64,000 bases of DNA from Ylistrum balloti (Eukaryota): contig NW_026782081.1 in the NCBI RefSeq assembly GCF_031769215.1, forward strand, positions 2,294,001 through 2,358,000, in the 5' to 3' direction. The notes beneath the pieces were generated by a model that worked only from the letters and a program-made list of their open reading frames with translations, was not told the DNA's origin and did not search any database. The position numbers and the translations under genes were made by a program. Shown in pieces: positions 4,908-54,000 of the stretch (positions are counted from its first letter, which is position 1; every line of letters starts with the position of its first letter).

Positions 4908-5915
4908 AATCATCAATGGGTGTCTTAGTTTATCATCATTGGGTGTCTTAGTTTATCATCATGGGGTGTCTTAGTTTATCATCATTGGGTGTCTTAGTTT
5001 ATCATCATTGGGTGTCTTAGTTTATCATCATTGGGTGTCTTAGTTTATCATCATTGGGTGTCTTAGTTTATCATCATTGGGTGTCTTAGTTTATCATCAT
5101 GGGGTGTCTTAGTTTATCATCATTGGGTGTCTTAGTTTATCATCATGGAGTGTCTTAGTTTATCATCATTGGGTGTCTTATTTTATCATCATGGGGTGTC
5201 TTAGTTTATCATCATGGGGTGTCTTAGTTTATCATCATTGGGTGTCTTAGTTTATCATCATAGGGTGTCTAAGTTTATCATCATGCGGTGTCTTAGTTTA
5301 TCATCATAGGATGTCTTAGTTTATAATCAATGGGTGTCTTAGTTTATCATCATAGGGTGTCTTAGTTTATCATCATGGGATGTCTTAGTTTATCATCATT
5401 GGGTGAGTTTATCATCATTGGGTGTCTTAGTTTATCATCAATGGGAGTCTAAGGTTATCATAATGGGGTGTCTTAGTTTATCATCATTGGGTTTATCATC
5501 ATTGGGGTGTCTTAGTATTATCATCATCATTGGGTGTCTTAGTTTATCATCATAGGGTGTCTAAGTTTATCATCATGGGGTGTCTAAGTTTATCATCATG
5601 CGGTGTCTTAGTTTATCATCATAGGATGTCTTAGTTTATCATCAATGGGTGTCTTAGTTTATCATCATAGGGTGTCTTAGTTTATCATCATGGGATGTCT
5701 TAGTTTATCATCATTGGGTGTCTTAGTTTATCATCATTGGGTGTCTAAGTTTATCATCATGGGGTGTCTTAGTTTATCATCATTGGGTGTCTTAGTTTAT
5801 CGTCATTGGGTGTCTTAGTTTATCATCATTGGGTGTCTTAGTTTATCGTCATTGGGTGTCTTAGTTTATCATCATTGGGTGTCTTAGTTTATCATCATTG
5901 AGTGTCTTAGTTTTT
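4908..5915. repeat. Minisatellite, 23-bp unit (TGGGTGTCTTAGTTTATCATCAT), ~44 copies
   Basis: Directly visible tandem array. Confidence 0.97.
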
Positions 5916-12391: not shown

Positions 12392-15300
12392 GAAAAAAAT
12401 GTTTTGGAACTCTGAGAGACGAAGACATGCAGGTGTATATCTGGAGTAGCATCGTCAAATTATTACCGAAGTTTAAAAAATGGCACATTTTTAGTTAAAT
12501 CTGGTATGTCTGAATGCGCTACATAATTGTTACGCGAAAATACCTTGAGTTCAACGTGCACGTTTTTAGAGTTGATTCTTGCACTGACGGGACAGGTAAG
12601 GATAATGTCACTGTCTATGGTTGAATGGAACCTTGTCATCTTGTCTGTGAAAATAATGTCATCCACGATTGGCATGGCAACTACCACACATGTTGTTGGT
12701 CCAGTAAATTTTGCCATCAACACATACAGGTTCTGTAATAAACATAAAATCTAATTGATATTAGATCTATATCTGCCTCAATGAATTTGTAGTGTACAGA
12801 GACTCTATCTGGAGACTCTGTAGCTATATTTGTATTAGTATTATCATTATGATAATATTTTTGAATGGATGGATGATTATTTTTCTCATACACACTACCA
12901 CCTTGTATACAATATTGTTGACGTGACGTTCTAGTTATGAAAGTCATCCCACATTTACTGGTTAACCGTAAGGCCAGATATAGAAATCTCACAAAGGAAT
13001 GAATAATACCGTGCAGGTATTGTAACCTCTAATGTGAGATATCTTTATAAACAATGTATATACCAAAAGTTTGCGTCAGATTAAAAAGTTACAAAGTTTT
13101 CATTTCTCACTCACAAAAAGACGATGTTTAGACAAATAGTTTGTGGTGAGTACTACCGAATGGCTGAACTAAGAATTTGAGTATATGATATTGGCACAGT
13201 GTACATTGTATCATCAAAGTCAGAAACCATTCTTATATTGCAATAGCGGTGGAGTAAGGATACAATCATCACGAAATCTCCTTATTATGTTAATTTGTAA
13301 GGCTTAGTGTTTACATTACATACCAACTGAACCAATGAACGCCACCATCATGCTGTCTAATTCCTTACCGAATCATCGTCCCGATGATACAAAGTTTCTC
13401 GGCATGGAAAATCACTCCATCGGTCTTTTGAGTCTAACACGCGTAGTACGGGTTCTTGATAGTAGTACATCTCATCCTTCGTGAACGGTATTGCCACCGT
13501 GATTTCGTCCTTTAACAGAAACTATTGCGTTATATGTGACATACTAGTAGTTTGATTCTGTAGAAACAATAATGATCCTTAATTCTGATCAAATCAATCA
13601 TCTTATCCAAACTTTGAAATATCCGCGATATCAATATACAATGTATATGTTTATCATGATTTTCTACAGATCCTAGTGCATTAAGTCACTGTATTTCATG
13701 TCAGAGCCCACACAATTATAGTTGATATACTTCTATGCTTTCAGTCTACATATGTGAAGATTTGCCGTAACCTGCATGCCATGTTTCAATTCATCCGAAA
13801 TGTGACACGGTTCAGAATATATACATGTATTTGACGTTGTTCTAAAATTATCTGATATGTTTAAATAACGAAATTGATCTAATTATGGGGCTGTTGTACC
13901 TCCCCGTCAAGATTTTAAATTCTATTTCGATCAATATGGATTTCCCCCGGTCGCCTCCTAGGTTTCATAGGTTTCAAGAAAGTTTACCCTGATTGAGCAT
14001 CTATTCCAGTTCATCGCCTTAGACGGTCTAAATAGGTGCATTCGGAGTCACCGTGTCTAAATATAGAACACGTACGTCAGGAAAGTAATGTGTTTACCGG
14101 GGGCGTCGCTGGCAATATCGATATTACTTTTTTATATTTGACTTTTACAATCCTGAAAATACACTGAACACTGAGATGATATTCTTCCTTGTCTTCAACA
14201 CTATCAAGTAGGACTTTATGTCTCTAGCTGCATCGGCTGCATTCATAATCACCAAAGACATTTTGGCCAGTAATTGCGGAATGTATATGAACATGAAAAG
14301 TAAAATTAAAGAACATTCACGACTAAGTTTATTAGAAATATATTTTGAAATATGAAGAAATATCATGATGTCAGTAGCTGAGATCGAACTCAAGACCCAA
14401 TAAAAATTCGACTAACGTGGGAGTAACGGATGTAGAACTCGTCGAATTTTATTTATAAAAGTTGTCAAAATTGCATTTTCAGTCGAGAAAACTCCCATGT
14501 TTTAGTGCATATTGTTTCATGTAGCAACTTTGGCGATCTGTAAAAATAACTCATGACACTTATCAAAGACATTTTTGTTCTGATAATTGGTATTTGGATA
14601 TATCTAACTGAAATTGACTTTTCTAATTCAACAAAAAATAGAACATTATCTTTATAATTTTATTGTTGGTCATATTTTGGTAGAATCAGGTAGTCACACG
14701 CCCAACCTCTTTAGGCCCTTAGAATCACTGACGAGTCCTAGAAGGACGAAAAAGTAGTTTGATGCAGTTCAATTATTTTTATTGGCTCAACTGTATCTAA
14801 CTCTAAATTTGTGTTAAAATGTGCTATTCACTTGTGTGTCTTTTGTACAATCTTCCTAACATCTTACTTCGTCTTCCTCGCCAGTTAGGATCTCGCTTGG
14901 AACTATATGGAGAATGTTACTGACGACATTTTCGTAGATATTGACCACTGACGGAACATCGGCTGGATAGACAAGACTGCAGTGTGCTGGGTCCGATGTG
15001 TCCATTTCCGTGTAGACAACACACCCCACCACCGACCTTCCATTAAAGTCCTCCACAAGTAAACTGTAACAGTAACAGTGATCTATGTAGGAAATGTTTA
15101 CAGTTTTCGAACATATGCATACATAGATTTATGTATATCTGGTAAAATCGTTGTGAACATCAAATGTATTGATGTACAGCATCGAAAAGAGTTATCTTTC
15201 CCATAAACGCCAAACAGACCATAGGCGATATCTTGTATAAGCTGTTTTTAAAATGGCAGCAGATACTCTACTATACATACATGTATGTAGTTCCTAACAC

Positions 15301-18300
15301 GTCATATCTGATTTAAGAAAATTAAGAAATAATGGAATACCCATTTTAATGACTCACGTTTACCTCAATACAGCAGTGTTACATGTACAAATGCGTATCA
15401 AGCAATATGTAATTCTTCAAATAAAAATAAAAACAAGTTCGGTATAACTACAGCATTAGGAAATAAAGAACAATCCATATACTGACATTTTATATCTACG
15501 GATTTGATTGACACCTTACACATATCGTTAGAACAGTAGCTAGATCAATTGAACTGTCATTTTAAACCGGAAGCAGTAGATGGCGCCAGTTGGATATTAT
15601 TGACGACGTCTTGCCAACAAAATAGTTAAAGGAGACATATATATCTATATTGCTGCTTTTATTTTTACTGTTTAACAAATATACAATGTGATATTACATC
15701 TATGATATCTCACGTGTCTCGTTTAGGGATTTAGGGATTTTGGGATTTAAACAAACATCATGTATCTACAAGAAAGTGGTTAGTTAGCTTTTCCGAGGTC
15801 TTTGTTGGTTACTATTATATGTATGGCACCCTAAACACGCTAATACGTTTGTACGGATACTTACACCACATCATTCAGGTTAGAGTAGGTACTAGTCCAG
15901 TCCAGTGAACTGATACTGTCTGAAAATGACATTCAATAACACATTATTGGCAATAGGATAAATAAACAATGTGACGCCATGAAATAGAATTACATCGACA
16001 TGACAATAGTCATTCTTTTTATAAAGTATATTGTTACACCTCTAAAGTGAAGTATGAAATTCCAGATGTTTGTTACAGAACAATGGTTACAGGTCAGCAT
16101 CTCGATGTAGACTGCTTTTGTCACAGCTCATTGCTGTTTGGTACTTCCCGGTCATTGCACAACAATTTTCAGCATTAAACAAGTTGGCAGATTACATAAA
16201 AGTGAAACACTCCGCATTGCATTGATTTATTCCCAATAATGATGCCGTCCTATCATTTATATTTATCTATAATTTATTTGTTTAGACATCAGTCGTAGAA
16301 GGTATGACAAAACATTTGTAGACTGGATTTTCGGTCAACATGTGTTATGTTGAACCAGAAGACTAAACGTTTGCCCGAGGCCTTCTGTCTGTTTCGAAGG
16401 TTCAAAATAACACATGTTGACCTCAAATCCAGTCAACAAATGTATACTGTCTATCGGGTATATGTTATCTTCTTTTATAAAACACTCGTCCAATTCTGTT
16501 AACTAAAGGGAAGGAAACGTGGTGTTATCGAATGAGATTTGTAAGCTCGCTGTTTTTTAAGAGTGAAGGTGGTTTTAAATGTAATAGTGACAACTTTTTA
16601 TATAATTTTCACTGACGAAACAGCAGTATGATGCAGTTTATTTCATTGTTTCGCGCTACCGTGTTAATTCAAAACATGCATTGAAAGTTGTCATTTACTG
16701 GTGTGGTTATTGCACAACCACCATAAACACTTTAGTCTTATTGTCTTCTATATTTTAGTTAAACACACTTAAGGTTTAACATATCGCAAGAAGGGTATTG
16801 GAATGAGTTAGTCATAGTGAAAAAATATTTACTTATACCCTGTAGACTGTAAACAATCATTGACTAACATGCATTGCATGGCGTCCTGTATGTTTCAAAT
16901 TATAATAACTTTAACTGAGTTTCAAGAGAAAACATGAGCAGAAGTTAAATATATAAAAACAAAAAAATCCCTAATCTAGCATGGCAATGGTTAGGGAAGG
17001 TCAAACCGAGTAAATAAAGTGTTCTCTAATAATGCTTACACTGCTATTAAAGAATGATATGAAGGACAAGTTATGCACGAAATCATTAACGTTTGTTTTT
17101 TTTACTGGCGGACATATTGTGTTGTCTTTCAGAAAGTATTTTTTTTAGAAATAAAACTTTGCAGAGAAAGGGGACCATTGCTAAAATACTACATTTTCCT
17201 TATCAAATTTACCAAATGAATTTTTTTCTGTTTTTCATTCAATTGTACGACAAATACATCAAAATGAAACCTTGATTCGTTATAAGCTATATTTCTGTTT
17301 TAAAGTTCCAAAAGACTGGATATAGAGTACATCTGATATGTTGAGCCATAATTAGAAAGTTATTAGTAATTAGAAATCGAAGTTTTGAGAATTTTTCGCA
17401 ATTTGATACTTTCTATACATGTACTTTCTATACCTTTCCTTGAGTACTTTTCCTCGTCAGGTGACTGATCGATGTTGCCACTCAGGCGTGATGGTATTTT
17501 GTCATTGACATCAGTTTGATGGTTGAGGACTAATGTCTCTTTAGTTGACTTTTCAGTTGATCTTTCATCGCTGTCATCATCATCATTTTCCTCGACTTTT
17601 CTGTCACATGAAACCTCATCGCCATCGAAATGCACACTATTCTCATTTTCTTCATTTGTACAAGACTCGTTTCTCTGTTCTGTTGCCATGTTACTGTGAC
17701 TATCATCGTCTGAGTTTTGTTTTTCATCCTCTTGACCAATGTCCATACTTGATAACCGACGAATTGTTGCGATCTCCTCCTGTTCCTGAATACTGTTAGA
17801 GTCCTGGTTCTCTGTTTCTTCATTAGATTCAATGTTTTCCTCGGTTGATGTTGTCTCCGACTGACAATGGGGCGACTCATCATCTGCACTCATCTCAGCT
17901 GTGTGCTCTGTAGCAGTATCTGAATTGTCATGATCTTCTTTCTTTTCTTTGTCGTTTTCTGAATGTAATGCTCTTGACACACTTTTGTCTGGATGTTCTT
18001 TTGTGACGGAAGAGTCTACTCTTACACAGGCTGCCACTACCTGTCGCATTAGTCGTAATTCTTTGTACACGTCCTTCATGGTAAGTTTTTTCTGTCGATG
18101 GTTAAGTTCATCTTTGTTGTTTTCTTCCCTTTTCTCACTTTCCTTTATGGTATCGAATTTGGGTTCTTTTGATGACACAAGTTCAGACAAGTTTCTGTCA
18201 AGTTTTGTCCGTCGGATCAATCGATCCTTCATGGTACTGAGAGCTTCTGAGAACTGTTTTTCTCGTGCCATGTCGCCAATATTGTTGTAACTGTCGGTAC

Positions 18301-22061: not shown

Positions 22062-22297
22062 ACCTTTATTTATTTTACATCAATTGAGGGTGAAGTTTTT
22101 CCAACTTATATATATTTCTTGACGGCCCGTAATGGGGGCGGACGAGTGGTCTTACTGTAGGAGGAAACTTTAATAGCCGGGATAAACCCACGTGATCGGG
22201 CAGGTGACCCCCATACCTTTTCACGCTCATTCTGGGAATCGAACCACGGACGGTTAGGTGAAAGGCGAGTGCGTTATCACTGCGCAACCCGACTATC
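22062..22297 (-). mobile_element. tRNA-derived SINE
   Basis: A-box-like GTTGCGCAGTGATAA, B-box GGTTCGATTCCC, central GGTTT.TCCCGG..AGTTTCCTCC core, AT-rich tail; homologous to 45241-45433. Confidence 0.8.
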
Positions 22298-25200: not shown

Positions 25201-25811
25201 TAAGCTTTCAAAAGCTGAATAAGCTTCGTAAAAATAATTGGTCCAGGGAAAGTGTCAAGTAGAAACTCACTCATAAATAAGTTCATACCTGTGTTATTGA
25301 TCGTTTGTATAACACTGAGTACGTTTAAAATCCTTTGTGACATTTCGTATTTCAAATATTTTCTTTTGTATTAAAACCGAACAAGGCCTTTAATTGTATT
25401 GGTACTTATGATAATCATCTTGACAGATAAAGGAGAAAAATATTTGTTTTTAACTGTTGGATGGCTTCAATTTTCCTTTTTTGAAATTATATTTGTAAAT
25501 TTAAGCATGTCCTTAACGATACTAAACAGTGCATAGTTTTCTGAGTCATACAGGAACTATTTTTGTGTTAGCATGGTAACCCAGCTCAAAGACTGCAGCT
25601 TGTTTTTGTTGTACATATCAGATAAACAAAAAACAACAGAGAAAAGTAATGACACCCATATCAATTAATGTTGTTGTATAATATATAAATCTGAATGATA
25701 TTAACTTCTGTCTATTTGTACAACAAAGGTGGGGTACAGATTTCTGAGTCATACAGGAACTATTTTGATACATGAAAATCGCTAGCCCCTCATGCTGAAT
25801 TTTAATACATG

Positions 25812-26062
25812 AGAATGTTGGCACGTGCTCGTGCATTTGACGTTGTTCTGTATTGAAATTTTTAAGCTTAAAATAGTTACGGGATTAGTATACCTCTCTA
25901 TTTCTTCCCTCAAAAAATGGTTTTGGCTAATATTGATTTTCCAAAGCCTCCCAAAATTTAGTCACTAGCGTCAATTACATTTTGTAAAAACAAAAAAGCC
26001 CAAAAATTCTAATTCTAAATTTACATTGAATGGTGCTATTCCCTTGTGTGTCCTCTGTAACT
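25812..26062 (+). mobile_element. Retrozyme-like repeat copy C (hammerhead region lost)
   Basis: TTTGACGTTGTTCT, GCCTCC and GGTGCTATTCCCTTGTGTGTC blocks retained; the ribozyme segment is replaced by A-rich sequence. Confidence 0.55.
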
Positions 26063-28002: not shown

Positions 28003-28040
<38 letters not shown>

Positions 28041-31000
28041 AAGATGTTATTCTCTTTTGAACAATCTTTGAGATTGCTGGGGTAGTCACTGCTGGTGGAC
28101 TCTTCGTCCCCTAGGTTTGCTGTATGCAAACATTTTAATTCACTCGAATATTGGTATGGTTATGAATATACACATGAATTTGACGTATTCTAAAATTATC
28201 TGTTATATGAAAATTACGATTTTTTAAAAAAAAATATGGGGTATGTACACCTCTTTATCTATATATGTTTTGTCTTTCTTTTGATCACTTTGGATTTTGC
28301 TCTGTTGCCTCCTATTTTAAAATATAGACCCTCAGTACCACTTACCAGTCCTAGAAGGACGAAACAGCTGTATGATACAATTAGATTCATTGCTCTGCTC
28401 TATTGCATCTTATTTGTACAATCCTCATCAATTCATGAAATTAATATCGACAAAAGTATGATGTCTCCAAGCAAATCTATAAAACGGAATGTATTGATGT
28501 TGAAATCAATTCTATACATACGTGAAATTATACACGAGTAGTTCAATTTATAAAACTTAATTACATGAAAGTGTAGTTAATAATTAAATTTGGTACCAGG
28601 CAAAACGTTCGATACATCGAGAAACTATAATCATCGAATTTTGATTAATAGAAGTTTATATTTATATATAATTTGTTATTATGTAACTTTCCATATTTTA
28701 GAAAACTGGTTGCTTTGTAAATCATTTTAGGCTTTTAAGTATTATCCAGCTACAACTCTTATTAGATCAGAAATGTTCTATCATATGTCATCTATATTTC
28801 ATGATTCGAGAGACTGAAGCCTGTCTTACATTTTATAAACAACCCAATTTTCTCACAATGTGTATCCATTGATAACATGGCTGTACTCTATTACATTACA
28901 GATACAACCCATTTGAGGGTATGTGGTCTGTATTACCCTCTATGCCAAGACCACGTGCGAAGTTTTCTACGAATGTACTTAAAGGAAAGATAATAGTTAC
29001 AGGTACGTATGTACCAATTAAAGTATGTATAGTACACCACTATCATATCAACATTATTAAATAACATCATGAAGAATAACTTTAGGATATGTAACTGAAA
29101 ACGAACGACGTCATGAAGTGTATATTTTGGAAATGTAACTGAAAACGAACGACGTCATGAAGTGTATATTTGGGAAATGTAACTGAAAACGAACGACGTC
29201 ATGAAGTGTATATTTGGGAAATGTAACTGAAAACGAACGACGTCATGAAGTGTATATTTGGGAAATGTAACTGAAAACGAACGACGTCATGAAGTGTATA
29301 TTTGGGAAATGTAACTGAAAACGAACGACGTCATGAAGTGTATATTTGGGAAATGTAACTGAAAACGAACGACGTCATGAAGTGTATATTTGGGAAATGT
29401 AACTGAAAACGAACGACGTCATGAAGTGTATATTTGGGAAATGTAACTGAAAACGAACGACGTCATGAAATGTATATTTGGGAAATGTAACTGAAAACGA
29501 ACGACGTCATGAAGTGTATATTTGGGAAATGTAACTGAAAACGAACGACGTCATGAAGTGTATATTTGGGAAATGTAACTGAAAACGAACGACGTCATGA
29601 AATGTATATTTGGGAAATGTAACAGAAAACGAACGACGTCATGAAGTGTATATTTGGGAAATGTAACTGAAAACGAACGACGTCATGAAGTGTATATTTG
29701 GGAAATGTAACAGAAAACGAACGACGTCATGAAGTGTATATTTGGGAAATGTAACTGAAAACGAACGACGTCATGAAGTGTATATTTGGGAAATGTAACT
29801 GAAAACGAACGACGTCATGAAGTGTATATTTGGGAAATGTAACTGAAAACGAACGACGTCATGAAGTGTATATTTGGGAAATGTAACTGAAAACGAACGA
29901 CGTCATGAAGTGTATATTTGGGAAATGTAACTGAAAACGAACGACGTCATGAAGTGTATATTTGGGAAATGTAACTGAAAACGAACGACGTCATGAAGTG
30001 TATATTTGGGAAATGTAACTGAAAACGAACGACGTCATGAAGTGTATATTTGGGAAATGTAACTGAAAACGAACGACGTCATGAAGTGTATATTTGGGAA
30101 ATGTAACTGAAAACGAACGACGTCATGAAGTGTATATTTGGGAAATGTAACTGAAAACGAACGACGTCATGAAGTGTATATTTGGGAAATGTAACTGAAA
30201 ACGAACGACGTCATGAAGTGTATATTTGGGAAATGTAACTGAAAACGAACGACGTCATGAAGTGTATATTTGGGAAATGTAACTGAAAACGAACGACGTC
30301 ATGAAATGTATATTTGGGAAATGTAACAGAAAACGAACGACGTCATGAAGTGTATATTTGGGAAATGTAACTGAAAACGAACGACGTCATGAAGTGTATA
30401 TTTGGGAAATGTAACTGAAAACGAACGACGTCATGAAGTGTATATTTGGGAAATGTAACTGAAAACGAACGACGTCATGAAGTGTATATTTGGGAAATGT
30501 AACCGAAAACGAACGACGTCATGAAGTGTATATTTGGGAAATGTAACTGAAAACGAACGACGTCATGAAGTGTATATTTGGGAAATGTAACTGAAAACGA
30601 ACGACGTCATGAAGTGTATATTTGGGAAATGTAACTGAAAACGAACGACGTCATGAAGTGTATATTTGGGAAATGTAACAGAAAACGAACGACGTCATGA
30701 AATGTATATTTGGGATATGTAACTAAATTGGCATCATGAAGTGTACATTTGGGATATGTAACTGAACCCGAACGACATCGTGAAGAGTATATTTCGGTTA
30801 TGTAACTGATATAAAGTGTATATATTTGAACTAGTGACTGACAACGACATTGTGAAACTAATACTTGTTTTTTAAAGCATGAATAACAACTTCAATGAAT
30901 CGATATATGTTATGTTGACATGTATTGTTTGCTGTGTGACTGACATTAACTAATGCATTATTGGTTCCAGTTTTTAATCGATAGAGTCGTGGCTTGATTT

Positions 31001-37000: not shown

Positions 37001-40000
37001 CAAATAGATCAATCACATTAGTATATTAGGAAAAAAGTAAAACAAAATACCTACCCAATAACAGAAATTTAATCACACTGAAAGGTGAGGACCTGATGCT
37101 CAGGAAGAGTAGGCGTATTCTGCTTAATCGACGACAACCGCCTTGTAAATTTTTGTCGAGCATTGTCACAGTCCCAAATGATAACTGTATACAAAGGAAC
37201 CTTTTATAACATTACATGGAAATCAGATATTAATCTCCAGTAATATGCAGAAGGTTTAATCATTTGCACTTAACATAGACAAGCATGTGCATTAAATATG
37301 ACAGAATCCAGGCGTTAATGATATATTTGTTTTTAAAAATGAATATACAATTAACACATTCTCTACGACGTTAATTGGAACCGGTTTGATATCCTACTGT
37401 CACAATCATATTCGCATCAAAAGTTAAAAAAAAAGATTAAAGCCAGACGAATTTTAATATCTCTTAAAAAAATTGTGTTAGGCTGTAAAAGATAAAAACA
37501 GTCGTACCAGTTGAAATAAAATATTGTACTTTGTACTTTAGGTTTAGTCTGTGATTTCCATGGGGATTTCGTTGACCTCGCTGATGGTAGTATACCGTGG
37601 TTCATCAGGAGAAATGACGCGCATTAACAATTGAGCCGTTTGTTTTTTAAAGCAGCCCATTGATTCCTTCATCCCCATTGGTTAATTTCCTTGAACGTGT
37701 CTTATTTATTTATAAACTTTTCCTATAAACAACACATGAATACCACCATAAATGCCATAAGTAAATTCCCTTATAAGCTATGAAACAAGACGAAAATAGG
37801 AAGATGTTTACAGCTATAATCAGCGTAGTCATCATCATATTTTTCACCTGTCAAACTATCGGTTGCTTTTGAAATCTATTATTTGTGTTGGGTGTCAAAC
37901 AGGATCCATATACATATACACTTCGTCTCAATGTAATAAAATAAAATTTCAAAGGTATGAAGTGATACCCAAAGTACTGTATAGGGCCAGGCTAATTTAA
38001 GAGATATCCAAAGTGCAGCTTGGGCCAGGCTGATATAAGACATATCCAAAGTGAGCTTGGGCCAGGCTGATGTAAGAATTATCCAAAGAATAGTATGGCG
38101 CCAGACTGATGTTAGAAATACTAGAAATACCCAAAGAACAGTATGGGGCCAGACTGATGTTAGAAACATCCAAAGACCAGTATGGGGCCAGACTGATGTA
38201 AGAAATATCCAAAGACCAGTATGGGGCCAGACTGATGTAAGAAATACCCAAAGATCAGTATGGGGCCAGACTGATGTAAGAAATATCTAAAGACCAGTAT
38301 GGGGCCAGACTGATGTAAGAAACATCCAAAGAACAGTATGGGGCCAGACTGATGTAAGAAATACCCAAAGACCAGTATGGGGCCAGACTGATGTAAGAAA
38401 TATCCAAATAACAGTATGGGGCCAGACTGATGTAAGAAACATCCAAAGACCAGTATGGGGCCAGACTGATGTAAGAAACATCCAAAGACCAGTATGGGGC
38501 CAGACTGATGTAAGAAATATCCAAATAACAGTATGGGGCCAGACTGATGTAAGAAACATCCAAAGACCAGTATGGGGCCAGACTGAGTAGAAACATCCAA
38601 AGACCAGTATGGGGCCAGACTGATGTAAGAAATATCCAAATAGACAGTATCCAAAGACCAGTATGGGGCCAGACTGATGTAAGAAACATCCAAAGACCAG
38701 TATGGGGCCAGACTGATCCTAGAAACATCCAAAGACCAGTATGGGGCCAGACTGATGTAAGAAATATCCAAATAACAGTATGGGGCCAGTCTGATGTAAG
38801 AAGTATCCAAAGACCAGTATGGGGCCAGACTGATGTAAGAAACATCCAAAGACCAGTATGGGGCCAGACTGATCCTAGAAACATCCAAAGACCAGTATGG
38901 GGCCAGACTGATGTAAGAAACATCCAAAGACCAGTATGGGGCCAGACTGATGTAAGAAACATCCAAAGACCAGTATGGGGCCAGACTGATGTAAGAAATA
39001 TCCAAATAACAGTATGGGGCCAGACTGATGTAAGAAGTATCCAAAGACCAGTATGGGGACAGACTGATGTAAGAAACATCCAAAGACCAGTATGGGGCCA
39101 GACTGATCCTAGAAACATCCAAAGACCAGTATGGGGCCAGACTGATCCTAGAAACATCCAAAGACCAGTATGGGGCCAGACTGATGTAAGAAATATCCAA
39201 AGACCAGTATGGGGCCAGACTGATGTAAGAAACATCCAAAGACCAGTATGGGGCCAGACTGATCCTAGAAACATCCAAAGACCAGTATGGGGCCAGACTG
39301 ATCCTAGAAACATCCAAAGACCAGTATGGGGCCAGACTGATGTAAGAAATATCCAAATAACAGTATGGGGCCAGACTGATCCTAGAAACATCCAAAGACC
39401 AGTATGGGGCCAGACTGATGTAAGAAGTATCCAAAGACCAGTATGGGGCCAGACTGATGTAAGAAACATATAACATCCAAAGACCAGTATGGGGCCAGAC
39501 TGATCCTAGAAACATCCAAAGACCAGTATGGGGCCAGACTGATGTAAGAAATATCCAAATAACAGTATGGGGCCAGACTGATGTAAGAAACATCCAAAGA
39601 CCAGTATGGGGCCAGACTGATGTAAGAAACATCCAAAGACCAGTATGGGGCCAGACTGATGTAAGAAATATCCAAATAACAGTATGGGGCCAGACTGATC
39701 CTAGAAACATCCAAAGACCAGTATGGGGCCAGACTGATGTAAGAAATATCCAAATAACAGTATGGGGCCAGACTGATGTAAGAAACATCCAAAGACCAGT
39801 ATGGGGCCAGACTGATGTAAGAAACATCCAAAGACCAGTATGGGGCCAGACTGATCCTAGAAACATCCAAAGACCAGTATGGGGCCAGACTGATGTAAGA
39901 AATATCCAAATAACAGTATGGGGCCAGACTGATGTAAGAAATATCCAAAGACCAGTATGGGGCCAGACTGATGTAAGAAACATCCAAAGACCAGTATGGG

Positions 40001-43000
40001 GCCAGACTGATGTAAGAAATATCCAAATAACAGTATGGGGCCAGACTGATGTAAGAAATATCCAAAGACCAGTATGGGGCCAGACTGATGTAAGAAACAT
40101 CCAAAGACCAGTATGGGGCCAGACTGATGTAAGAAACATCCAAAGACCAGTATGGGGCCAGACTCCAAAGACCAGTATGTAAGAAACATCCAAAGACCAG
40201 TATGGGGCCAGACTGATGTAAGAAACATCCAAAGACCAGTATGGGGCCAGACTGATGTAAGAAACATCCAAAGACCAGTATGGGGCCAGACTGATGTAAG
40301 AAACATCCAAAGACCAGTATGGGGCCAGACTGATGTAAGAAACATCCAAAGACCAGTATGGGGCCAGACTGATGTAAGAAAACATCCAAAGACCAGTATG
40401 GGGCCAGACTGATGTAAGTACCCAAAGAAGTATACCCAAAGAACAGTATGGGGACAGACTGATGTAAGAAACATCCAAAGACCAGTATGGGGCCAGACTG
40501 ATCCTAGAAACATCCAAAGACCAGTATGGGGCCAGACTGATGTAAGAAATACCCAAAGAACAGTATGGGGACAGACTGATGTAAGAAATATCCAAAGAAC
40601 AGTATGGGGACAGACTGATGTAAGAAACATCCAAAGACCAGTATGGGGCCAGACTGATCCTAGAAACATCCAAAGACCAGTATGGGGCCAGACTGATGTA
40701 AGAAATATCCAAATCCAAAGAACAGTATGGGGACAGACTGATGTAAGAAATACCCAAAGAACAGTATGGGGACAGACTGATGTAAGAAATATCCAAAGAA
40801 CAGTATGGGGACAGACCAGTGTAAGAGATACTCTGATAATTGATAGATTAAAGCTTGCAAAGTTTATATATATTGATCATGACACTGCCTATCCTGAAAA
40901 GATATGCTTTGTTTCTTGACATTGTAGGATTTTTATCTGTTTATCCTCTCCTCATATGTACCTTTAGGTCCTATGCTATCCACAATCCATCATTTGTAGT
41001 GCTCGGAATGATAACCGGCCATGCTGCCGATTATATACTCTCTACATCCTCCTCTACTTAAAACGTCATACCACATGTGTGAATGTGTTGGGTTTGCATA
41101 GCAACAATCTCAACACAAAATCAATTGCGTATTTATTATAGTAATTGACCGAGGTTCCATGTCTGTGTTGCTCGATGTAATTTCAGCCCCATTGTGTGTT
41201 CTTTATCTCATGTGACCTATATTGTTATTGTAATTACTACAGCCAGATTTTCTCCATAAACTACTTGTTGTCCACTGGTTAGCGAGACTGATTGATTGAC
41301 TCATGTGATTAGCATTGTCTAATTTTCCTAGTACCGCTTTATATATATCAACTTAAAGTCTTGTCTCTTAAGTGATAATTCTGTGAGAAATTAACCGCCA
41401 GGTTGAACTTAATACAAACAAAGGTAGTTTATAACAATGACTTTACTTATTTTGTTATTTATCTTTTGAAGTCATAATCCAAACAAGATGATTTGACAGC
41501 CATGTTTTATTCTTACAAGTTGACGTACCTGGACGTGGTCTGGGTGATGGAGAGACGAAGTATGTGTGGTAATCTAGCAAAAGCAGGGTGACATCCGGTT
41601 ATGCTGCTGCCGATGGCGTTATAATTAGTCAGAGCAGATTCCATCATTATACGCGAGCAACCACCGAACGGGACCACATACACGGTCCGCACTAATATGT
41701 ACCTGATCTCTTCACTTAACAGCAACTTGGTTTTCTCGAAGTAAACAAACAGGAACAGCTTTCCACGAAGCTGTATGATAAGCGTAATAATTTTAGGCCC
41801 CTATGTAAATTGCCAATTTCTAGATAGCAACATAGCTGTATCCTAAATTCATGATGTTAAAATGTTGCAGATGATTCGATATTCTAGGGCATGTTTCCGA
41901 TATCACGATATTTACACATGGTGTCGGCATAAACACACAAACTCACAATACAGGTTCGAAAGACAGAGGTTTATTATGATCCTGGAGATGTTTTACGGTT
42001 GTCGTAATGATCTTGAGATCTTGAGAAATATACTAATGTCGTTGCGCGATATAAAATTCTGCGTGTGTGATACTTGTCAGTATTTTGGGATTCCGTTATT
42101 TACCTTATTTGGAAACTTGTCTTAGTTTACGGAACCAAAATTTACATAGCAGGTGTCGTAAATAAAGAAAAGAGCGCTTTCTCTTCCAGAACACCTGAAC
42201 CTATTCTGCCTGTTCGTTTTCAGTGGTCTCTATTCTTTGTTCATATGGGTTCAACTTCTGTCTGATTGTTCTCTTTGTATTGTATATGGGATATATTTTT
42301 AACGTGTAAACCTCCATACATAAAAACAGGATTACTTGGTGTCTACATATCTAATAATCAAATATTGATTAGCTACACGTAATCAACGATGCAAGTTATC
42401 AAGGTTTTCCATTAGACAATACAATTATATTTCCAAGGTCTTGTCTATGATATAAAAATATCTGTCAACAGGGCCTAAATGTACGACATTAATAAACATG
42501 GGGATGTATGTACTACATAATCAGTAGACTTACTTATATACTAAGATATCAACACCTAACACACCATGAACAAACCAAAACAAACTGTCAAGAAGTGAAC
42601 AAGAACAAACACCTAATGTTCAATAGTGTTAGCAAGCAAGTATTAGATATATCACAGCGCCAAGAACAAAAAAATCAGTATCAAATTAAGCAAAAGGTCA
42701 AATGTCACTACGTCAGCCAATAACAATTATGCAGCACATTCTAGAAAAAGAACGACACTAGGAGACTTCTTTGTGCGATATGAAGCTGAATGTGTTTCAT
42801 GCTCGTTAGTTTGCCTGTTGATTCCGTTGCTATATAACAACATTTTAAATTGTTTATGTAACGGTTAACAATCCACTCCATTCCTATTTCTCTAATTATA
42901 AAATTTAAGGTTTTCGCTTTCGATATTAAGTAAATCTTGGAATATGTCTTGATAAAAGCGATGGATTAAACAATCTGATCGGTTTTTAAAGTAAAACACT

Positions 43001-46000
43001 CGGCTAGCCGCAAGGCTGGTATTTGTCCTTTGAAAATAAGGTAAACAAATGCCACTGATTTCCCCTCGTTTTGTATCGAGAAAGCCCATGTATACAGGAT
43101 TCTGAAGCAGTCTATTTGAACCATTTGTACACATCAGCATTCAGTCTTGTCATAGCCCATTCCTAAAGTGAACATTATACTGGAGACAATATCAGATAAT
43201 TGTTCCATCCTTTCTCTGTACTGAAATTCGAACAATAGCGTACGATACATTTCATGTAAATCACATTTTTCTCTTTAGAATGAATACCATTAAATTAAAA
43301 AAACATGGAAATGTCTGAAATCTGTCATTTAATATTTCAAATAAGAAGGTGATCAACTACTACATTGAGTTCGAGGTGTTGACATTTTCTATGCCATTGA
43401 TCTCTACATTTTATACGTTTACTACAGACTAATCAAGACCTAACTGAATATTGCAATTTATCAAAGAACTCCGATGTGGATTCTAGTCCTTTTTAGAGAG
43501 AAATCAATCGAATTAACACAGCCCTTTTCCTTTGATATCACATAAGGACACGGTTGATGACAGCCTCCAGGGGTAAATGTGATGTATATCTAATGGTTTT
43601 AGCGAATTTGTTTCTTCCTGTGTTATGTAACATATATATACTTTCATATTCTTGTTGTCCCTTAATTAGTCTAATTGTTTGTTAACTCCAACAATATGTA
43701 GAAGCTAAAAATGAGTAAGTACAATTTGTTGTATTTTTTAAGGATAGTATTGAATTAGTTGTTTATTACAGGGTATATGAAGGACAGAAATGGGTGGAGC
43801 TCGACAAGGAATACCCCCAGAAATTACCTGTCAATTTGGACCGATTCTCCATGGTAAAACAAGGGCGATCATTTTACTTTATTGGAGGTAAATTTGTGAT
43901 ATAGGGTTACTAGCTCCCTGTAGCGTAGTGGCCTTTTGTGTACAACGTAATTCTACTAATTCCATATCGTAGTGAATATTTCATTAGGTTCATCTGGACA
44001 TTCCGCACTGAAACACGTCACTGTAGTTAAATAAATAAAAAAATGTTCTTTGTTTCAAAACAGTATGATAGGGAGTATTTCAAACAATGAATGGAATATA
44101 ATACCACAATTAGTCAGCAAACCATAAACACAAGACCCTACAATTTATACATAGATTGATAAGAAGGGTTTAGTAAATAAAACATACTCTGGTTCCCTTT
44201 TTCCTTTAAGGATGTATGAAACTCATGTTTGACAGGAAATGAGACATAATTCAATATTAGATAAATAAAAGCGTAATGCCATATATTTTTAGCAGTTTGA
44301 TATAGTATCTTACAAATATATTTTATATATTTATATTTATATATATTAAAACTTTATTCTATGACGGCATGTGACGCCGCTGTTCGATTTAAATGATATT
44401 TTGGCATCTAATTATCATCAGATCAAAAGTTAAATTTTCGAAAGTTTTTGGTGTTTGTGTTCCATACATCCATAAACGATACGCATAAAATAATTTCACG
44501 GTTAAGTCTATCATCACTAGATATTTTATCGATGGCTTGGAAAAAATTATTCTCATTGAATCTGACACAGAAGTTCGTTCCCTTATGGATGAAACACTCA
44601 ATCTCTTACATTGTGCTATAATCATTTTAGGTGTGTCGTGTCGAAAGGATAAAGACTTTCCCGGAAGGTTCAAGTTTGTGACAGAGAGACGTATATTTTC
44701 CTACGCCACAAGTGTTTCTGCCTTAGAAGAGGCTCAAGGCGATGCCATGTCATCTCGCCTCGTGTCCCCATGGTGCAACAAGCTGCCTACAATGACATTT
44801 GCCCGCCACAGCGCAGGTGTAGCCGTCATTGGTATGTATAAAAATACAATGCAATTTCGTCATGAGTTCGGCACAACCTGGATCTAACGAGGTATAACAC
44901 CTGGTAATTTGTATACTAATGATGAAATTGTGTTTTTCATTGGTGCCTCGACAACACATACAATGTATCCACTTAAACTAGACCAGTTGTCTGAGTATGA
45001 CCTGCTATCTGCTGCTGTGATAATGCGACAGCGATTGTGAATGTGTCTTATACGTTATAAGAGAAGTAGATAAACCTGGCTTCATGTCATTTTCCGGTTC
45101 GTCAAATTATGTGCGCTACATCGCATGATTTACTTTAAAAAGCAAATGCTTAAATGAGTGGCTTTTTCAGATTCATCGGAGTGTCTCCATTGATAAGAAT
45201 TTGTTACCGGTTTCTACATTTAGTAGATGCAAATGAATATAACCTTTATCTTAAAACAATTGCGAAATAAGTTATTTCAACTTATACTAATCATTCTTGT
45301 TGGCCCGGATGTAAGCATGCGAGAGGTCATGTTGTGGGAGGAAACAAGAGAACCCGGGGAAAATACGGGCAGGTCCCGGTCCGAGAATCGAACCGCGGAC
45401 GGCTAGGTGGAAGGCAAGTGCGTCACTACCCTAGGAGAGAGTAATACACGGAGATCAAAAAGATTGTACAAAAGACACACAAATGAATGACACCTTTTCA
45501 TAATTTATAGTGAGATACAGTAGAGCCAAACAATGGTTTAAACTGCATCATACAGCTGTTTCGTCCCTATAGGACTCGTCATTGATGCCAAGGGCTTGAA
45601 TTTGAATCCTAGGAGGCGACTAAGGAAAATCCAAAGTGATCAAAAGAAAAGTCCAAGTTTTGACAGGGAGGTGCAGCAGCCCCCAAATTAAATAAATTTC
45701 GCAATTTCCATACATCAAATAATTTAGAATAGCGTCAAGTACATGGGTATTTTCTGAACATTGCCACTATTCGAGTGAATTAAAACGTGACAAGCTGGTT
45801 ACTGCAAACCTCAGGGACTTAAAGTCCACCAGCAGTGTCTACCACTTGCAACCTTAAGATTAAATCAAATTAAAGATTAAATTGTTGTTTTACGAAGCTG
45901 TTTTGTTTGGTGATTTACATTTTATATATCGCTGCACATCCTTAAATGTGAGTATTATCAAAACCCCAATATCGTAGGTACCGAATGATGCACATGTAGC

Positions 46001-51054: not shown

Positions 51055-54000
51055 GTATATTAATTTGAGGGACACGAGACAGAGTTATGCAAATCTGAGG
51101 ATGTTCAGGGAGAAATTATGTCATTATCTCTTGTTTCGTGTAGAAGATGTCGTATCTTAATGTATGGAATTTTACGGATAGTACAAATGAATCTTAAAGG
51201 ATTCGTTTAAAACAACTATCACTGAAGATTTCATACTCTGAAAACGGGTTATTTGTCTTGTGGATTCATGAAATAAACTTAAGATAAAGCGATCTACGCG
51301 CATGTGAAATCAGCTTTGCGGTATGTTGATAATATTTTCGAAGTTGAAACATTGTTAACCTCTGCTTATATCTGAAAACTTTTCCGATTTACTAGGAAAC
51401 AAGCTGAACAGATCACATGACTGATCACGTGACAAGGTCATATGGTACTTCCATGAATTACGTTGTAATGTGAAAAGACACGCGTGTTTTAGATACAGTT
51501 GTCACTCTCTAACTGCTAATTGGAAGTGACAATGTCTATGAGGGGCGAGTTTACAATGATGACGTCACAGCGAGCGCTGAAGAGCAGTTAGTTTGGTTCG
51601 GGGGGTACTTTTTCTATCCACCTCATTTACCTCATACATGTAGACGTGAACATTGAAATCAAACGCCGTCTTTGCAGTTTTCAGATGAATTCGTCACGAG
51701 TACGACAGTTCTCTTTGCATTTATAAACATTGGCATTCAATGTATGTTCATGTACGTGAAGTTCTTGTCAACCATGTTGTTTCTTTTCTATCCGAATCTT
51801 CAAGTGTCAAATTTGAGTAATAAAGAGGAGGTGTTAGTTTTGTAACATACTCATAGAAAATATAGTGTTTAGGACATGTTCTAATCCTTATAGTCGCTTA
51901 AAGAGGTACAAATATGCAAAGGGTGAAAATTCATATTCCGAATGGATATTGATAACAGAAAAATATGGGTCTGTGCAACAATTTCCCAGCGGACCAATGT
52001 CATTACAGAATTTGAAATTATCAATGTACTGGTTTTTCCTGGAAAATTTATTTATTTTCAAGCAACAAATGGTAAATTGAGGAAAGGGAAAGGAAGCTTG
52101 AGATACTTGCTGGGTGTATGCATTCCGTAGAAAATGGACAATTTCCCTTCATTAGGGATAATCTGTGATAACGCTTTATTGAAAAGTAATGCATGTTTAT
52201 GTAATTTACCGCAAGCGAACAGAGAAGTCCGTCTGTAGCCAATGATAGAAAATTCTACAGACTTAGTGAAAGTTTTCATTGAGTTTCCAACACTATAAAA
52301 ATTGGTAAAGACATAGAAATAAGAGATCAAATTGTTAGTAAAATTCCGATAGATATGCATGTGAATGTCTATCTCCTAAAAACGGCAGTATGATCTGATA
52401 TCGATGTTTCCTGTATATTGTGTTATCAGCAGTATGATCTGATATCGATGTTTCCTATATATTGTGTTATCAGCAGTATGATCTGATATCGATGTTTCCT
52501 ATATATTGTGTTATCACCAGTATGATCTGATATCGATGTTTCCTATATATTGTGTTATCACCAGTATGATCTGATATCGATGTTTCCTATATATTGTGTT
52601 ATCACCAGTATGATCTGATATCGATGTTTCCTATATATTGTGTTATCAGCAGTATGATCTGATATCGATGTTTCCTATATATTGTGTTATCAGCAGTATG
52701 ATCTGATATCGATGTTTCCTATATATTGTGTTATCACCAGTATGATCTGATATCGATGTTTCCTATATATTGTGTTATCAGCAGTATGATCTGATATCGA
52801 TGTTTCCTATATATTGTGTTATCAGCAGTATGATCTGATATCGATGTTTCCTGTATATTGTGTTATCACCAGTATGATCTGATATCGATGTTTCCTATAT
52901 ATTGTGTTATCAGCAGTATGATCTGATATCGATGTTTCCTATATATTGTGTTATCAGCAGTATGATCTGATATCGATGTTTCCTATATATTGTGTTATCA
53001 CCAGTATGATCTGATATCGATGTTTCCTATATATTGTGTTATCACCAGTATGATCTGATATCGATGTTTCCTATATATTGTGTTATCAGCAGTATGATCT
53101 GATATCTATATATTGTGATGTTTCCTATATATTGTGTTATCAGCAGTATGATCTGATATCGATGTTTCCTATATATTGTGTTATCAGCAGTATGTGATGA
53201 TGTTTCCTATATATTGTGTTATCAGCAGTATGATCGATGTTTCCTATATATTGTGTTATCAGCAGTATGATCTGATATCGATGTTTCCTATATATTGTGT
53301 TACCAGTATGATCTGATATCGATGTTTCCTATATATTGTGTTATCAGCAGTATGATCTGATATCGATGTTTCCTATATATTGTGTTATCAGCAGTATGAT
53401 CTGATATCGATGTTTCCTATATATTGTGTTATCAGCAGTATGATCTGATATCGATGTTTCCTGTATATTGATTGTTTGATATGTTTCATAACTAAAGGGG
53501 ATTACGATGGTAAACATTTACAGGAAAAAACGTAATTCAAACTGAATCACTCGGAAATTAATGCAAAATATGAACAGACAAAATACCGAATCCCCTAAAA
53601 GCAAAATAGTGAGAACATCATTTGGTCCTTGAGTGCTGCAAGCAACGCCACATTACTAAGATAAAACCCTTTGAGTAACAATGGGAAGGGACGCAACCGA
53701 GTGTTATTCATATCCTAGGCATGGATGTAGAAACAACAGTGGCAGATAAGTAGTGATGTTAGGGGTGGTGCTACAGAAAGTAAAGTTCACAATAAAAATA
53801 AAAAACAAAAATGAAATCGGCTATACCGACTGGAGAAAGGCCGTTTCTGTCAAGTAGATACTGGTGAATGATAAGAAGTTGTCTCGATTTCATGCTGAAG
53901 GAGATGGAACTTTTATTAGACAAAGGCAACCTATCGTTAGAAGAGCTGAAAATTAATTTTACTTGTTAAAGAATTTATGACCTGTTCTGACAAATTCTGG

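What the first reader, a model, noticed from the sequence alone, without database searches (positions are those of the whole stretch)
45458..45862. Dispersed ~360-400 bp repeat family carrying a minimal type I hammerhead ribozyme (retrozyme-like); best copy
Seen: on the minus strand, 45588-45545 reads GCATCA-ATGACGA-GTCC-TATAG-GGAC-GAAA-CAGCTG-TA-TGATGC. This gives helix I GCATCA/TGATGC, helix II GTCC/GGAC, the GAAA core, a self-complementary helix III CAGCTG and a GUA cleavage triplet. Only the first core base differs from CUGANGA. Homologous copies lie at 7.4, 13.8-14.8, 16.6, 25.8, 28.1 and 60.1 kb, and copy B supplies the perfect CTGACGA, so the consensus is a complete ribozyme. Established: minimal type I hammerheads with a short palindromic helix III occur in Penelope-like elements and in animal non-LTR retrozymes. 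These are non-autonomous units of a few hundred nt that self-cleave (often as dimers) and give circular RNAs. Inference: this is such a family, abundant in this genome (7 relics in 64 kb) and possibly undescribed for this species.
Basis: partly seen in the sequence, partly recalled or inferred. Interest (0 to 1): 0.92.

Follow-up and report, generated by a model that had tools for sequence, protein, structure and literature searches.

The report
Dead copy of hammerhead-ribozyme retroelement
This stretch is one decayed copy of a roughly 400-base non-coding mobile element, present thousands of times in what earlier notes call a scallop genome, that carries a self-cutting hammerhead RNA motif; the kind is already known from mussels, corals and amphibians, so this is a real but ordinary find.

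Summary
That is below the curated 34 because core base C3 is A.

The family's majority ribozyme is complete. The exact 44-mer occurs 67 times in the 648-Mb genome (0 in the reversed control) and scores 34.1 bits. An intact core plus helix II/III pattern occurs 3,532 times (0 in control).

The unit is about 393-400 bp, 38% GC and has no conserved ORF. The search gave at least 5,818 candidate places. Copies are about 81% alike, so the burst is old. All window copies have broken ribozymes.

Copies share a fixed 3' end 90-92 nt past the cut site. Their 5' ends vary and often begin inside an upstream partial unit. They have no poly-A tail and no consistent target duplication. This is the signature of Penelope-like elements (PLEs), which start reverse transcription inside the RNA. 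A non-autonomous 'non-LTR retrozyme' mobilised by a PLE is therefore the best reading.

No PLE partner was found, and no RNA evidence of cleavage or circles could be obtained. Many relatives carry 45-bp arrays of the ribozyme alone, which this scan has already reported on other DNA of this genome. Verdict: a new member of a known kind, of modest interest.

The parts
45459..45861 (-). Solo, about one-unit copy of the hammerhead-bearing repeat (profile positions 2-399 at 45856-45461). It is 80-86% identical to its best genomic relatives.
45545..45588 (-). Type I hammerhead relic: helix I 6 bp, helix II 4 bp with a 5-nt loop, GAAA, helix III C-AGCU-G, GUA triplet. The predicted cut would fall between 45551 and 45550.
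45582..45582 (-). Core position C3 reads A (AUGACGA instead of CUGACGA). The family majority has C here. The C3-G8 pair is needed for catalysis.
   Evidence: PMC11167929 for loss of activity in C3/G8 mutants
45459..45550 (-). The 90-92 nt between the cut site and the fixed 3' end of the element (ends ...GTACAATCTT). By analogy with PLEs, this is the presumed RT-binding and initiation region.
   Evidence: PMC11167929
7394..7690 (+). 5'-truncated copy (profile 66-384). Its ribozyme relic at 7582-7624 has a destroyed core. An A-rich run at 7694-7745 interrupts the 3' end.
13757..14853 (+). One copy (profile 46-260 and 259-399) split by an insertion of about 740 bp. The ribozyme relic at 14722-14765 has CTGACGA but a broken helix III.
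16614..16719 (+). 3' fragment (profile 295-398) that starts inside the ribozyme.
25791..26059 (+). Strongly decayed copy (E 1e-6).
28040..28425 (+). A copy slightly longer than one unit. It begins with the last ~35 nt of an upstream unit (terminal redundancy ...ACAATCTT at both ends) and lies directly after (TA)17. The ribozyme relic at 28339-28376 has a mutated CUGANGA.

Best explanation
Window 45459-45861 (-) is an old, inactive solo copy of a non-autonomous, non-coding retroelement of about 393-400 nt. Each unit of this element carries one type I hammerhead ribozyme, so it is an animal 'non-LTR retrozyme' in the sense of Cervera and de la Pena (2020). Proposed life cycle, all inferred: a master locus is transcribed into RNA longer than one unit. 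Because helix III is only 2 bp with a palindromic loop, two ribozymes pair through the 8-nt palindrome ACAGCUGU into a double hammerhead and cut after GUA. Monomers may then be ligated into circles. A PLE reverse transcriptase/endonuclease supplied in trans starts cDNA synthesis at an internal site about 90 nt 3' of the cut, at ...GUACAAUCUU. It copies an uncut multimer or a circle for one turn or more. The resulting insertions have a fixed 3' end, variable 5' ends that often lie in an upstream unit, no poly-A tail and no regular target duplication. Shown here: the ribozyme motif and its completeness in the family, the copy number, the age, the lack of coding capacity, the insertion anatomy, the presence of PLEs with their own hammerheads in the same genome, and the predicted preference for the dimeric fold. 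Not shown: transcription, cleavage, circles, and which enzyme moved the element. The window copy has lost core base C3 and is about 10% away from the family majority, so no function at this locus is expected.
For: Motif: the exact string is present, and Hammerhead_1 scores 30.0 bits end to end.

Family ribozyme is complete. The majority of 30 copies reads GCATCA-CTGACGA-GTCC-TAGAA-GGAC-GAAA-CAGCTG-TA-TGATGC. That exact 44-mer occurs 67 times against 0 in the control and reaches the Rfam gathering score at 34.1 bits. The pattern of intact core plus helices II/III occurs 3,532 times against 0.

Abundance and age: at least 5,818 candidate places. Mean pairwise identity is 81%. Conservation is flat along the unit, 0.86-0.92 majority frequency, with the ribozyme at 0.914. 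That pattern fits neutral decay after one old burst.

Non-coding: 38% GC, and the median longest open stretch is 57 aa even on a doubled unit.

Insertion anatomy. All 30 copies end within 5 nt of the same 3' end and their downstream flanks are unrelated to each other. 14 of 30 continue upstream into the 3' part of another unit. The 5' ends are scattered, and there is no poly-A tail and no consistent TSD. The terminal 15-mer occurs 1,663 times against 5 in the control.

The 3' end lies 90-92 nt past the cut. In the anole PLE PAc the cut is at +26 and RT starts at +111 to +118, which is 85-92 nt past the cut (PMC11167929). Resident PLE families lose homology 55-72 nt past their own cuts.

PLEs with GIY-YIG domains and palindromic-helix-III hammerheads co-occur in this genome.

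Folding: the monomer MFE (-13.6 kcal/mol) sequesters CUG of the core. Two molecules form an 8-bp helix III dimer at -33.3, against 2 x -13.6.

Precedent: mussel retrozymes are 350-390 bp with about 5,000 ribozyme copies and make abundant circRNAs (PMC7229834). Retrozymes are related to PLE pLTRs (bioRxiv 10.64898/2026.07.22.740005).
Against: No resident PLE with a homologous 3' region or the same ribozyme was found among 30 GIY-YIG loci. The three nearby family fragments look like chance insertions.

There is no RNA evidence for this species. Only assembled contigs were on offer, and the RNA or 'RNA?' runs share only the ribozyme plus or minus 15 nt with different flanks.

The whole unit does not fold better than shuffled sequence (z -1.2 and -0.8 on two decayed copies), unlike the 'highly self-paired' circles reported for known retrozymes.

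Long tandem arrays of the 400-bp unit, which are the classical retrozyme layout, were not seen. Copies are 1.0 to 1.6 units long.

The 30-copy sample was chosen by similarity to the query, so the 5'-end statistics are biased.

The ribozyme is not better conserved than the rest of the unit within this family.
Confidence: 0.75

Rival explanations
1. The units are not a separate element. They are 5'-truncated ends ('solo pLTR plus tail') of an autonomous Penelope-like element that carries this ribozyme.
For: PLE insertions are typically 5'-truncated partial tandems with a hammerhead near the 3' end (PMC8557442; PMC4209133). PLEs are present in this genome.
Against: In 14 of 30 copies the sequence upstream of unit position 2 is the 3' end of the same 400-bp unit, not an ORF. 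The cycle therefore closes on itself without coding sequence. None of 30 GIY-YIG loci has this ribozyme or homologous flanks as part of the PLE itself.
Confidence: 0.1
2. It is a pol III, tRNA-derived SINE that happens to carry a hammerhead, like Sm-alpha and Sj-alpha of schistosomes, and is moved by a LINE.
For: By eye the 5' region resembles a tRNA D-arm and anticodon arm. The length of about 400 bp and the dispersed solo copies resemble SINEs. The Sm-alpha precedent rests on my own knowledge and was not checked here.
Against: Rfam gives no tRNA match at E up to 5 in a majority-type copy, and ARAGORN finds none. There is no poly-A or simple-repeat tail and no consistent TSD. Copies longer than one unit with an internal 404-to-2 junction are not expected from a SINE.
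Confidence: 0.08
3. It is a satellite or minisatellite spread by DNA-level processes (unequal crossing-over, segmental duplication). The ribozyme is a passenger.
For: The ribozyme module forms 45-bp arrays of up to 30 units. A 47-bp array exists at the unit junction.
Against: Thousands of dispersed copies on hundreds of contigs share one precise 3' end and have unrelated flanks. DNA-level duplication would carry flanking sequence along with it.
Confidence: 0.04
4. It is a chance resemblance to a hammerhead in AT-rich repeat DNA.
For: The window copy scores below Rfam's gathering score.
Against: There are 0 matches in shuffles and in reversed controls, against 67 and 3,532 real matches. Majority-type copies pass the curated threshold. 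Every conserved core position is present in the family majority.
Confidence: 0.01

Closest known systems
Non-LTR retrozymes of metazoans, in particular the Mytilus galloprovincialis retrozyme (Cervera and de la Pena, NAR 2020, PMC7229834)
   Same: Both are non-coding units of 350-400 nt with low GC. Both carry one type I hammerhead per unit with helix I of 6 bp, helix II of 4 bp and a short helix III with a palindromic loop. Both have thousands of copies in a bivalve genome and co-exist with PLEs.
   Different: Here the genomic copies are mainly solo, 1.0 to 1.6 units long, with a defined 3' end, rather than tandem multimers. The sequence is unrelated as far as I could see. Expression as circRNA is not shown. 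Many relatives carry the ribozyme module amplified into 45-bp arrays.
Penelope-like elements and their pLTR hammerheads (PMC4209133; PMC8557442; PAc of Anolis, PMC11167929)
   Same: Shared features are: a partial tandem structure with a 5'-truncated upstream copy; a hammerhead that depends on a palindromic helix III (dimeric action); and an element 3' end tens of nt downstream of the cut (90-92 nt here, 85-92 nt in PAc, 55-72 nt in resident PLE families). TSDs are absent or irregular.
   Different: There is no RT/EN ORF. The ribozyme is of the 'canonical metazoan' form (helix I 6 bp, helix II 4 bp), whereas the resident PLEs have helix I of about 4 bp and helix II of 5-7 bp. No sequence homology to any sampled resident PLE was found.
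Rfam RF00163 Hammerhead_1 (newt satellite 2, Schistosoma Sm-alpha, cave-cricket pDo500 type)
   Same: Core, helix II (GUCC/GGAC) and overall length match the model consensus. Majority-type copies score 34.1 bits against the gathering score of 34.
   Different: The window copy itself has A at C3 and falls below threshold at 30.0 bits.

Membership tests
Hammerhead ribozyme, type I (Rfam RF00163) | Conserved core CUGANGA ... GAAA and cleavage triplet NUH | tested here: not met
   The window copy reads AUGACGA (C3 to A), while GAAA and GUA are present. The family majority and 67 exact genomic copies have CUGACGA. The feature is therefore met for the family and not for this copy.
Hammerhead ribozyme, type I (Rfam RF00163) | Three helices around the core, with helix I open (type I), and a score at or above the curated gathering score | tested here: met
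   In the family majority, helix I is 6 bp, helix II is 4 bp and helix III is 2 bp plus the AGCU loop. Copies in L003 and L010 score 34.1 against a gathering score of 34. The window copy scores 30.0.
Hammerhead ribozyme, type I (Rfam RF00163) | Mg2+-dependent self-cleavage 3' of H17 | not testable with these tools
   Only folding was possible. The monomer prefers an inactive fold, and the dimer forms the 8-bp helix III.
Non-LTR retrozyme (Cervera and de la Pena 2020) | Non-coding unit of ~170-400 nt with low GC and a type I hammerhead in each unit | tested here: met
   The unit is about 393-400 nt and 38% GC with no conserved ORF. There is one ribozyme per unit in all 30 copies, and it is formally intact in 6 of them.
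Non-LTR retrozyme (Cervera and de la Pena 2020) | Genomic organisation as head-to-tail tandem repeats (dimers to multimers) | tested here: inconclusive
   Head-to-tail junctions exist: 14 of 30 copies are 1.05 to 1.6 units long, and one pair of adjacent units lies on C442. No array of several full 400-bp units was seen.
Non-LTR retrozyme (Cervera and de la Pena 2020) | Expressed as self-cleaved, circularised RNA | not testable with these tools
   Only assembled contigs of four coded runs were offered. No raw reads and no read ends at the cut site were available.
PLE-dependent non-autonomous element (pLTR derivative) | PLE-type insertion signature: fixed internal RT start downstream of the hammerhead, 5' truncation, partial tandem | tested here: met
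   compared with PMC11167929 and with resident PLEs.
PLE-dependent non-autonomous element (pLTR derivative) | Sequence homology of the unit to the pLTR or 3' end of a resident autonomous PLE | tested here: not met
   blastn and the family profile against 30 GIY-YIG loci found only family fragments at varying distances beyond the PLE homology. The sample covers 30 of at least 117 candidate loci, so a partner may have been missed or may be extinct.
tRNA-derived SINE with hammerhead (Sm-alpha type) | tRNA-related head with A/B boxes, and an A-rich or simple-repeat tail with TSDs | tested here: not met
   No tRNA match. No tail and no consistent TSD in 30 copies.

The most novel reading that the evidence does not exclude
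The solo copies may be a fossil record showing that animal retrozymes are inserted by the internal-initiation mechanism of Penelope-like elements. Reverse transcription would start at a palindromic site 90-92 nt past the ribozyme cut, on an uncut multimer or a circle. In addition, a sub-lineage whose ribozyme had become a 45-nt tandem array may itself have been mobile. At least 13 independent loci share the same duplication register: inner units end TGATGT-A and the last unit ends TGATGC. That would mean in-cis ribozyme partners for double-hammerhead cleavage were selected at the level of the element, and the arrays did not arise as junk DNA at each locus.
Probability: 0.3. Interest if true: 0.55.

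Novelty: new member of a known kind. Interest (0 to 1): 0.3.

Why it matters
The finding adds a well-delimited hammerhead-bearing retroelement family to a second bivalve lineage. It has thousands of copies and precise ends. It also supplies genomic footprints that bear on an open question: how retrozymes are copied back into DNA. Those footprints are a fixed 3' end about 90 nt past the cut, insertions longer than one unit, and no tail. The numerical match with the RT start site measured in vitro for an anole PLE supports the recent proposal that animal retrozymes are non-autonomous PLE derivatives. For genome annotation, the family and its 45-bp ribozyme arrays explain many 'ribozyme' hits in this assembly as transposon relics rather than gene-regulatory elements. 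The specific window copy has no expected function.

Tried and rejected
1. Rfam at gathering threshold over the whole window found nothing. Rfam at E up to 1 over the whole window missed the 45.5-kb motif and listed only the 14.7-kb relic. Only a focused scan shows the 45.5-kb hit.

2. A strict regular expression for an intact hammerhead found none in the window. All window copies are defective.

3. tRNA origin of the 5' region: no support.

4. TSD search in 30 copies found only short chance matches.

5. Search for the autonomous partner among 30 GIY-YIG loci. Different ribozymes were found, and the family fragments near L081, L084 and L085 lie beyond the PLE homology at varying distances, so they are chance neighbours.

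6. Whole-unit RNA folding of two cut-to-cut units was not better than shuffles.

7. Sequencing runs. Ids and organisms are coded, and only Logan contigs were available. The ribozyme plus or minus 15 nt is shared with other organisms' contigs and a metatranscriptome, but with different flanks. There are no read ends and no strand information, so nothing can be said on expression, cleavage or circles.

10. I tried to estimate the share of internal junctions from exact 24-mer against 15-mer counts. Calibration on my own loci showed that the exact 24-mer misses most real junctions, so no fraction is reported.

11. A test for extra conservation of the ribozyme within the family found none. The profile is flat.

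No full-length consensus of the element was printed or saved as a sequence. Only a profile and the 44-nt ribozyme majority were used.
Full report
**Observation**

It is unique in the window even with three mismatches allowed, and it never occurs in 100 dinucleotide shuffles.

A focused Rfam scan aligns it end to end to Hammerhead_1 (RF00163) at 30.0 bits, E 2.5e-5. The only core departure is A for C at position 3. The curated threshold is 34. Whole-window scans do not list it, which I put down to the speed filters.

A profile built from 30 family members finds six solid or weak copies in the window:
- 7394-7690
- 13757-13971 plus 14709-14853, which is one copy split by about 740 bp
- 16614-16719
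- 25791-26059
- 28071-28412
- 45856-45461

The 60.1-kb 'copy' is only a faint remnant. Every window copy has a damaged ribozyme.

**The family**

A search of the window's own 648-Mb assembly with the 405-nt stretch gave at least 5,818 first-look candidates. The 40 that were scored are 80-86% identical to the query and nearly all span query positions 2 to 404.

In 30 fetched copies the majority ribozyme is GCATCA-CTGACGA-GTCC-TAGAA-GGAC-GAAA-CAGCTG-TA-TGATGC. That exact 44-mer occurs 67 times in the genome and 0 times in the reversed control. It reaches the Rfam gathering score at 34.1 bits. A looser pattern that requires an intact core, helix II and helix III occurs 3,532 times against 0 in the control.

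The unit is about 393-400 nt and 38% GC, and it has no conserved open frame. Copies are on average 81% identical to each other. Conservation is flat along the unit, with the ribozyme no better kept than the rest. This is what neutral decay after one old burst gives. Six of the 30 copies still have a formally intact ribozyme.

**Insertion anatomy**

All 30 copies stop within 5 nt of the same 3' end...GTACAATCTT, and their downstream flanks are unrelated to one another. The terminal 15-mer occurs 1,663 times in the genome against 5 in the control.

The 5' ends are scattered. In 14 of 30 copies the sequence upstream of unit position 2 is the 3' part of another unit, joined head to tail, so the insertions are 1.05 to 1.6 units long. 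Window copy D (28040-28425) shows the same terminal redundancy.

There is no poly-A or simple-repeat tail and no consistent target-site duplication.

The cut site lies 90-92 nt upstream of the fixed 3' end. A full-length DNA copy must therefore come from RNA that was uncut at its internal ribozyme or was cut and re-ligated, and reverse transcription cannot have started at a ribozyme-made 3' end.

**Comparison with Penelope-like elements (PLEs)**

In the only PLE studied biochemically (PAc of Anolis), the ribozyme cut is 26 nt into the ORF. Reverse transcription starts internally at +111 to +118, which is 85-92 nt past the cut. Unprocessed RNA is the main template, and genomic copies are partial tandems (PMC11167929).

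This genome has many GIY-YIG loci, some with 755-aa open frames in 5.36-kb tandems. They carry their own hammerheads 0.8-1 kb past the endonuclease match. Those ribozymes have helix I of about 4 bp, helix II of 5-7 bp, and palindromes ACATGT, ACCGGT or ACTAGT in place of helix III. Copies of three such PLE families lose homology 55-72 nt after their cut (approximate).

The 400-nt family therefore has the PLE insertion signature but no ORF. Its upstream continuation is itself, not coding sequence. That makes it a non-autonomous element and not a truncated PLE.

I found no PLE whose 3' region is homologous to it. The three family fragments near PLE relics lie beyond the PLE homology at differing distances and fit chance at this family's density.

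**How the ribozyme would work**

A single 44-nt ribozyme is predicted to prefer a fold that sequesters CUG of the core (-13.6 kcal/mol, against -7.8 for the hammerhead fold). Two molecules are predicted to pair through the 8-nt palindrome ACAGCUGU into a double hammerhead (-33.3, against 2 x -13.6).

This agrees with the established behaviour of metazoan type I hammerheads with a 1-2 bp helix III (PMC4209133). The C3-G8 pair is essential, so the window copy is predicted to be inactive.

**The 45-bp ribozyme arrays**

Most exact-majority ribozymes lie in tandem arrays whose 45-bp unit is the ribozyme plus one base. These arrays have up to 30 units at 97% matches. They are embedded between normal upstream and downstream parts of family-like elements that end at the same 3' end.

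In 23 arrays, 162 of 354 units are formally intact. That sample is biased, because the loci were chosen for containing an exact ribozyme.

In at least 13 independent loci the inner units end TGATGT-A and only the last unit ends TGATGC. This corresponds to one particular duplication register, in which the T comes from the upstream flank cccTTA. Array-bearing copies also differ from single-ribozyme copies at a few flank positions.

I read this as inheritance of an array from a mobile master, with later changes in unit number, and not as a separate birth at each locus. This refines earlier notes of this scan, which had already found these arrays on other DNA of the same genome. One array shows a compensatory G1:C44 to A1:U44 change across 25 units, which counts as one event.

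**RNA evidence**

When they were laid on a majority-type copy, one run of unknown type covers the whole element. The RNA or 'RNA?' runs, from other coded organisms and a metatranscriptome, share only the ribozyme and about 15 nt on either side, with different flanks.

This hints that the ribozyme module is conserved beyond this family. It shows nothing about expression, cleavage or circles in this species.

Two cut-to-cut units do not fold better than shuffles.

**Comparison with what is known, and verdict**

The closest described thing is the mussel non-LTR retrozyme: 350-390-bp units, about 5,000 type I hammerheads, abundant circRNAs, and co-existing PLEs (PMC7229834). A 2026 preprint argues from vertebrate data that such retrozymes are non-autonomous PLE derivatives and describes 'solo' monomers.

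The present family fits that class in every feature I could test, except the tandem layout (inconclusive) and homology to a resident PLE (not found). Earlier notes of this scan call the genome a scallop's, which I did not test.

It is a new member of a known kind. The window copy is a dead relic. The fixed 3' end about 90 nt past the cut and the apparently inherited ribozyme arrays are the only points a specialist might find useful.

Noticed in passing
window 45300-45450 (-) and 22236-22274 (+): Directly 3' of the retrozyme-like copy lies a tRNA-like stretch with a box-B-like GGTTCGATTC. A 39-nt part of it recurs at 22.2 kb at 90% identity. Neither ARAGORN nor Rfam calls a tRNA. It is probably a tRNA-derived SINE family.
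   Followed up: partly
L031 1881-3232 (G000:C427:1041380-1042731) and about 22 other loci (L032-L060): These are 45-bp tandem arrays whose unit is the whole hammerhead, with up to 30 units at 97% matches, embedded in family-like elements. Inner units end TGATGT-A and the last unit ends TGATGC in at least 13 loci. In L031 most units read GUG at the cut triplet (G17, predicted inactive).
   Followed up: partly
G000:C212:31445-31797 and G000:C246:415612-417841: The exact 24-nt unit junction (3' end joined to the next unit's start) recurs every 47 bp or at multiples of 47 bp. This is a second minisatellite, built around the presumed RT start and junction palindrome.
   Followed up: no
G000:C422:240415-261997 (L072-L075, L089); also C129:50248 and 67535: Five GIY-YIG matches lie 5.36 kb apart, four of them with 755-aa open frames. 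This looks like a tandem array of an apparently intact Penelope-like element. Its hammerhead is of a different type (helix I 4 bp).
   Followed up: partly
window 29067-30809, 52385-53470, 38123-40816, 60381-61280, 4909-5913: There are five large minisatellites, with periods of 44, 44, 39, 54 and 23 bp and 17 to 68 units. None resembles the ribozyme. The 39-bp array gives a spurious 878-aa ORF.
   Followed up: no
window 28006-28039: A (TA)17 microsatellite lies immediately upstream of copy D. PLEs are reported to prefer AT-rich or (TA)n targets. This is a single case, and the pattern was not seen in the 30 other copies.
   Followed up: partly
window 7694-7745: A 52-nt A-rich run interrupts the 3' end of the 7.4-kb copy. 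The element's last bases seem to resume after it, so it is not a retroposition tail of the family.
   Followed up: partly
L010:1570-1642 against runs X1-X3: Contigs of two other coded organisms and of a metatranscriptome share the ribozyme plus about 15 nt on each side at roughly 85-90% likeness, but they have unrelated flanks. The ribozyme module seems to be conserved across elements or species.
   Followed up: no
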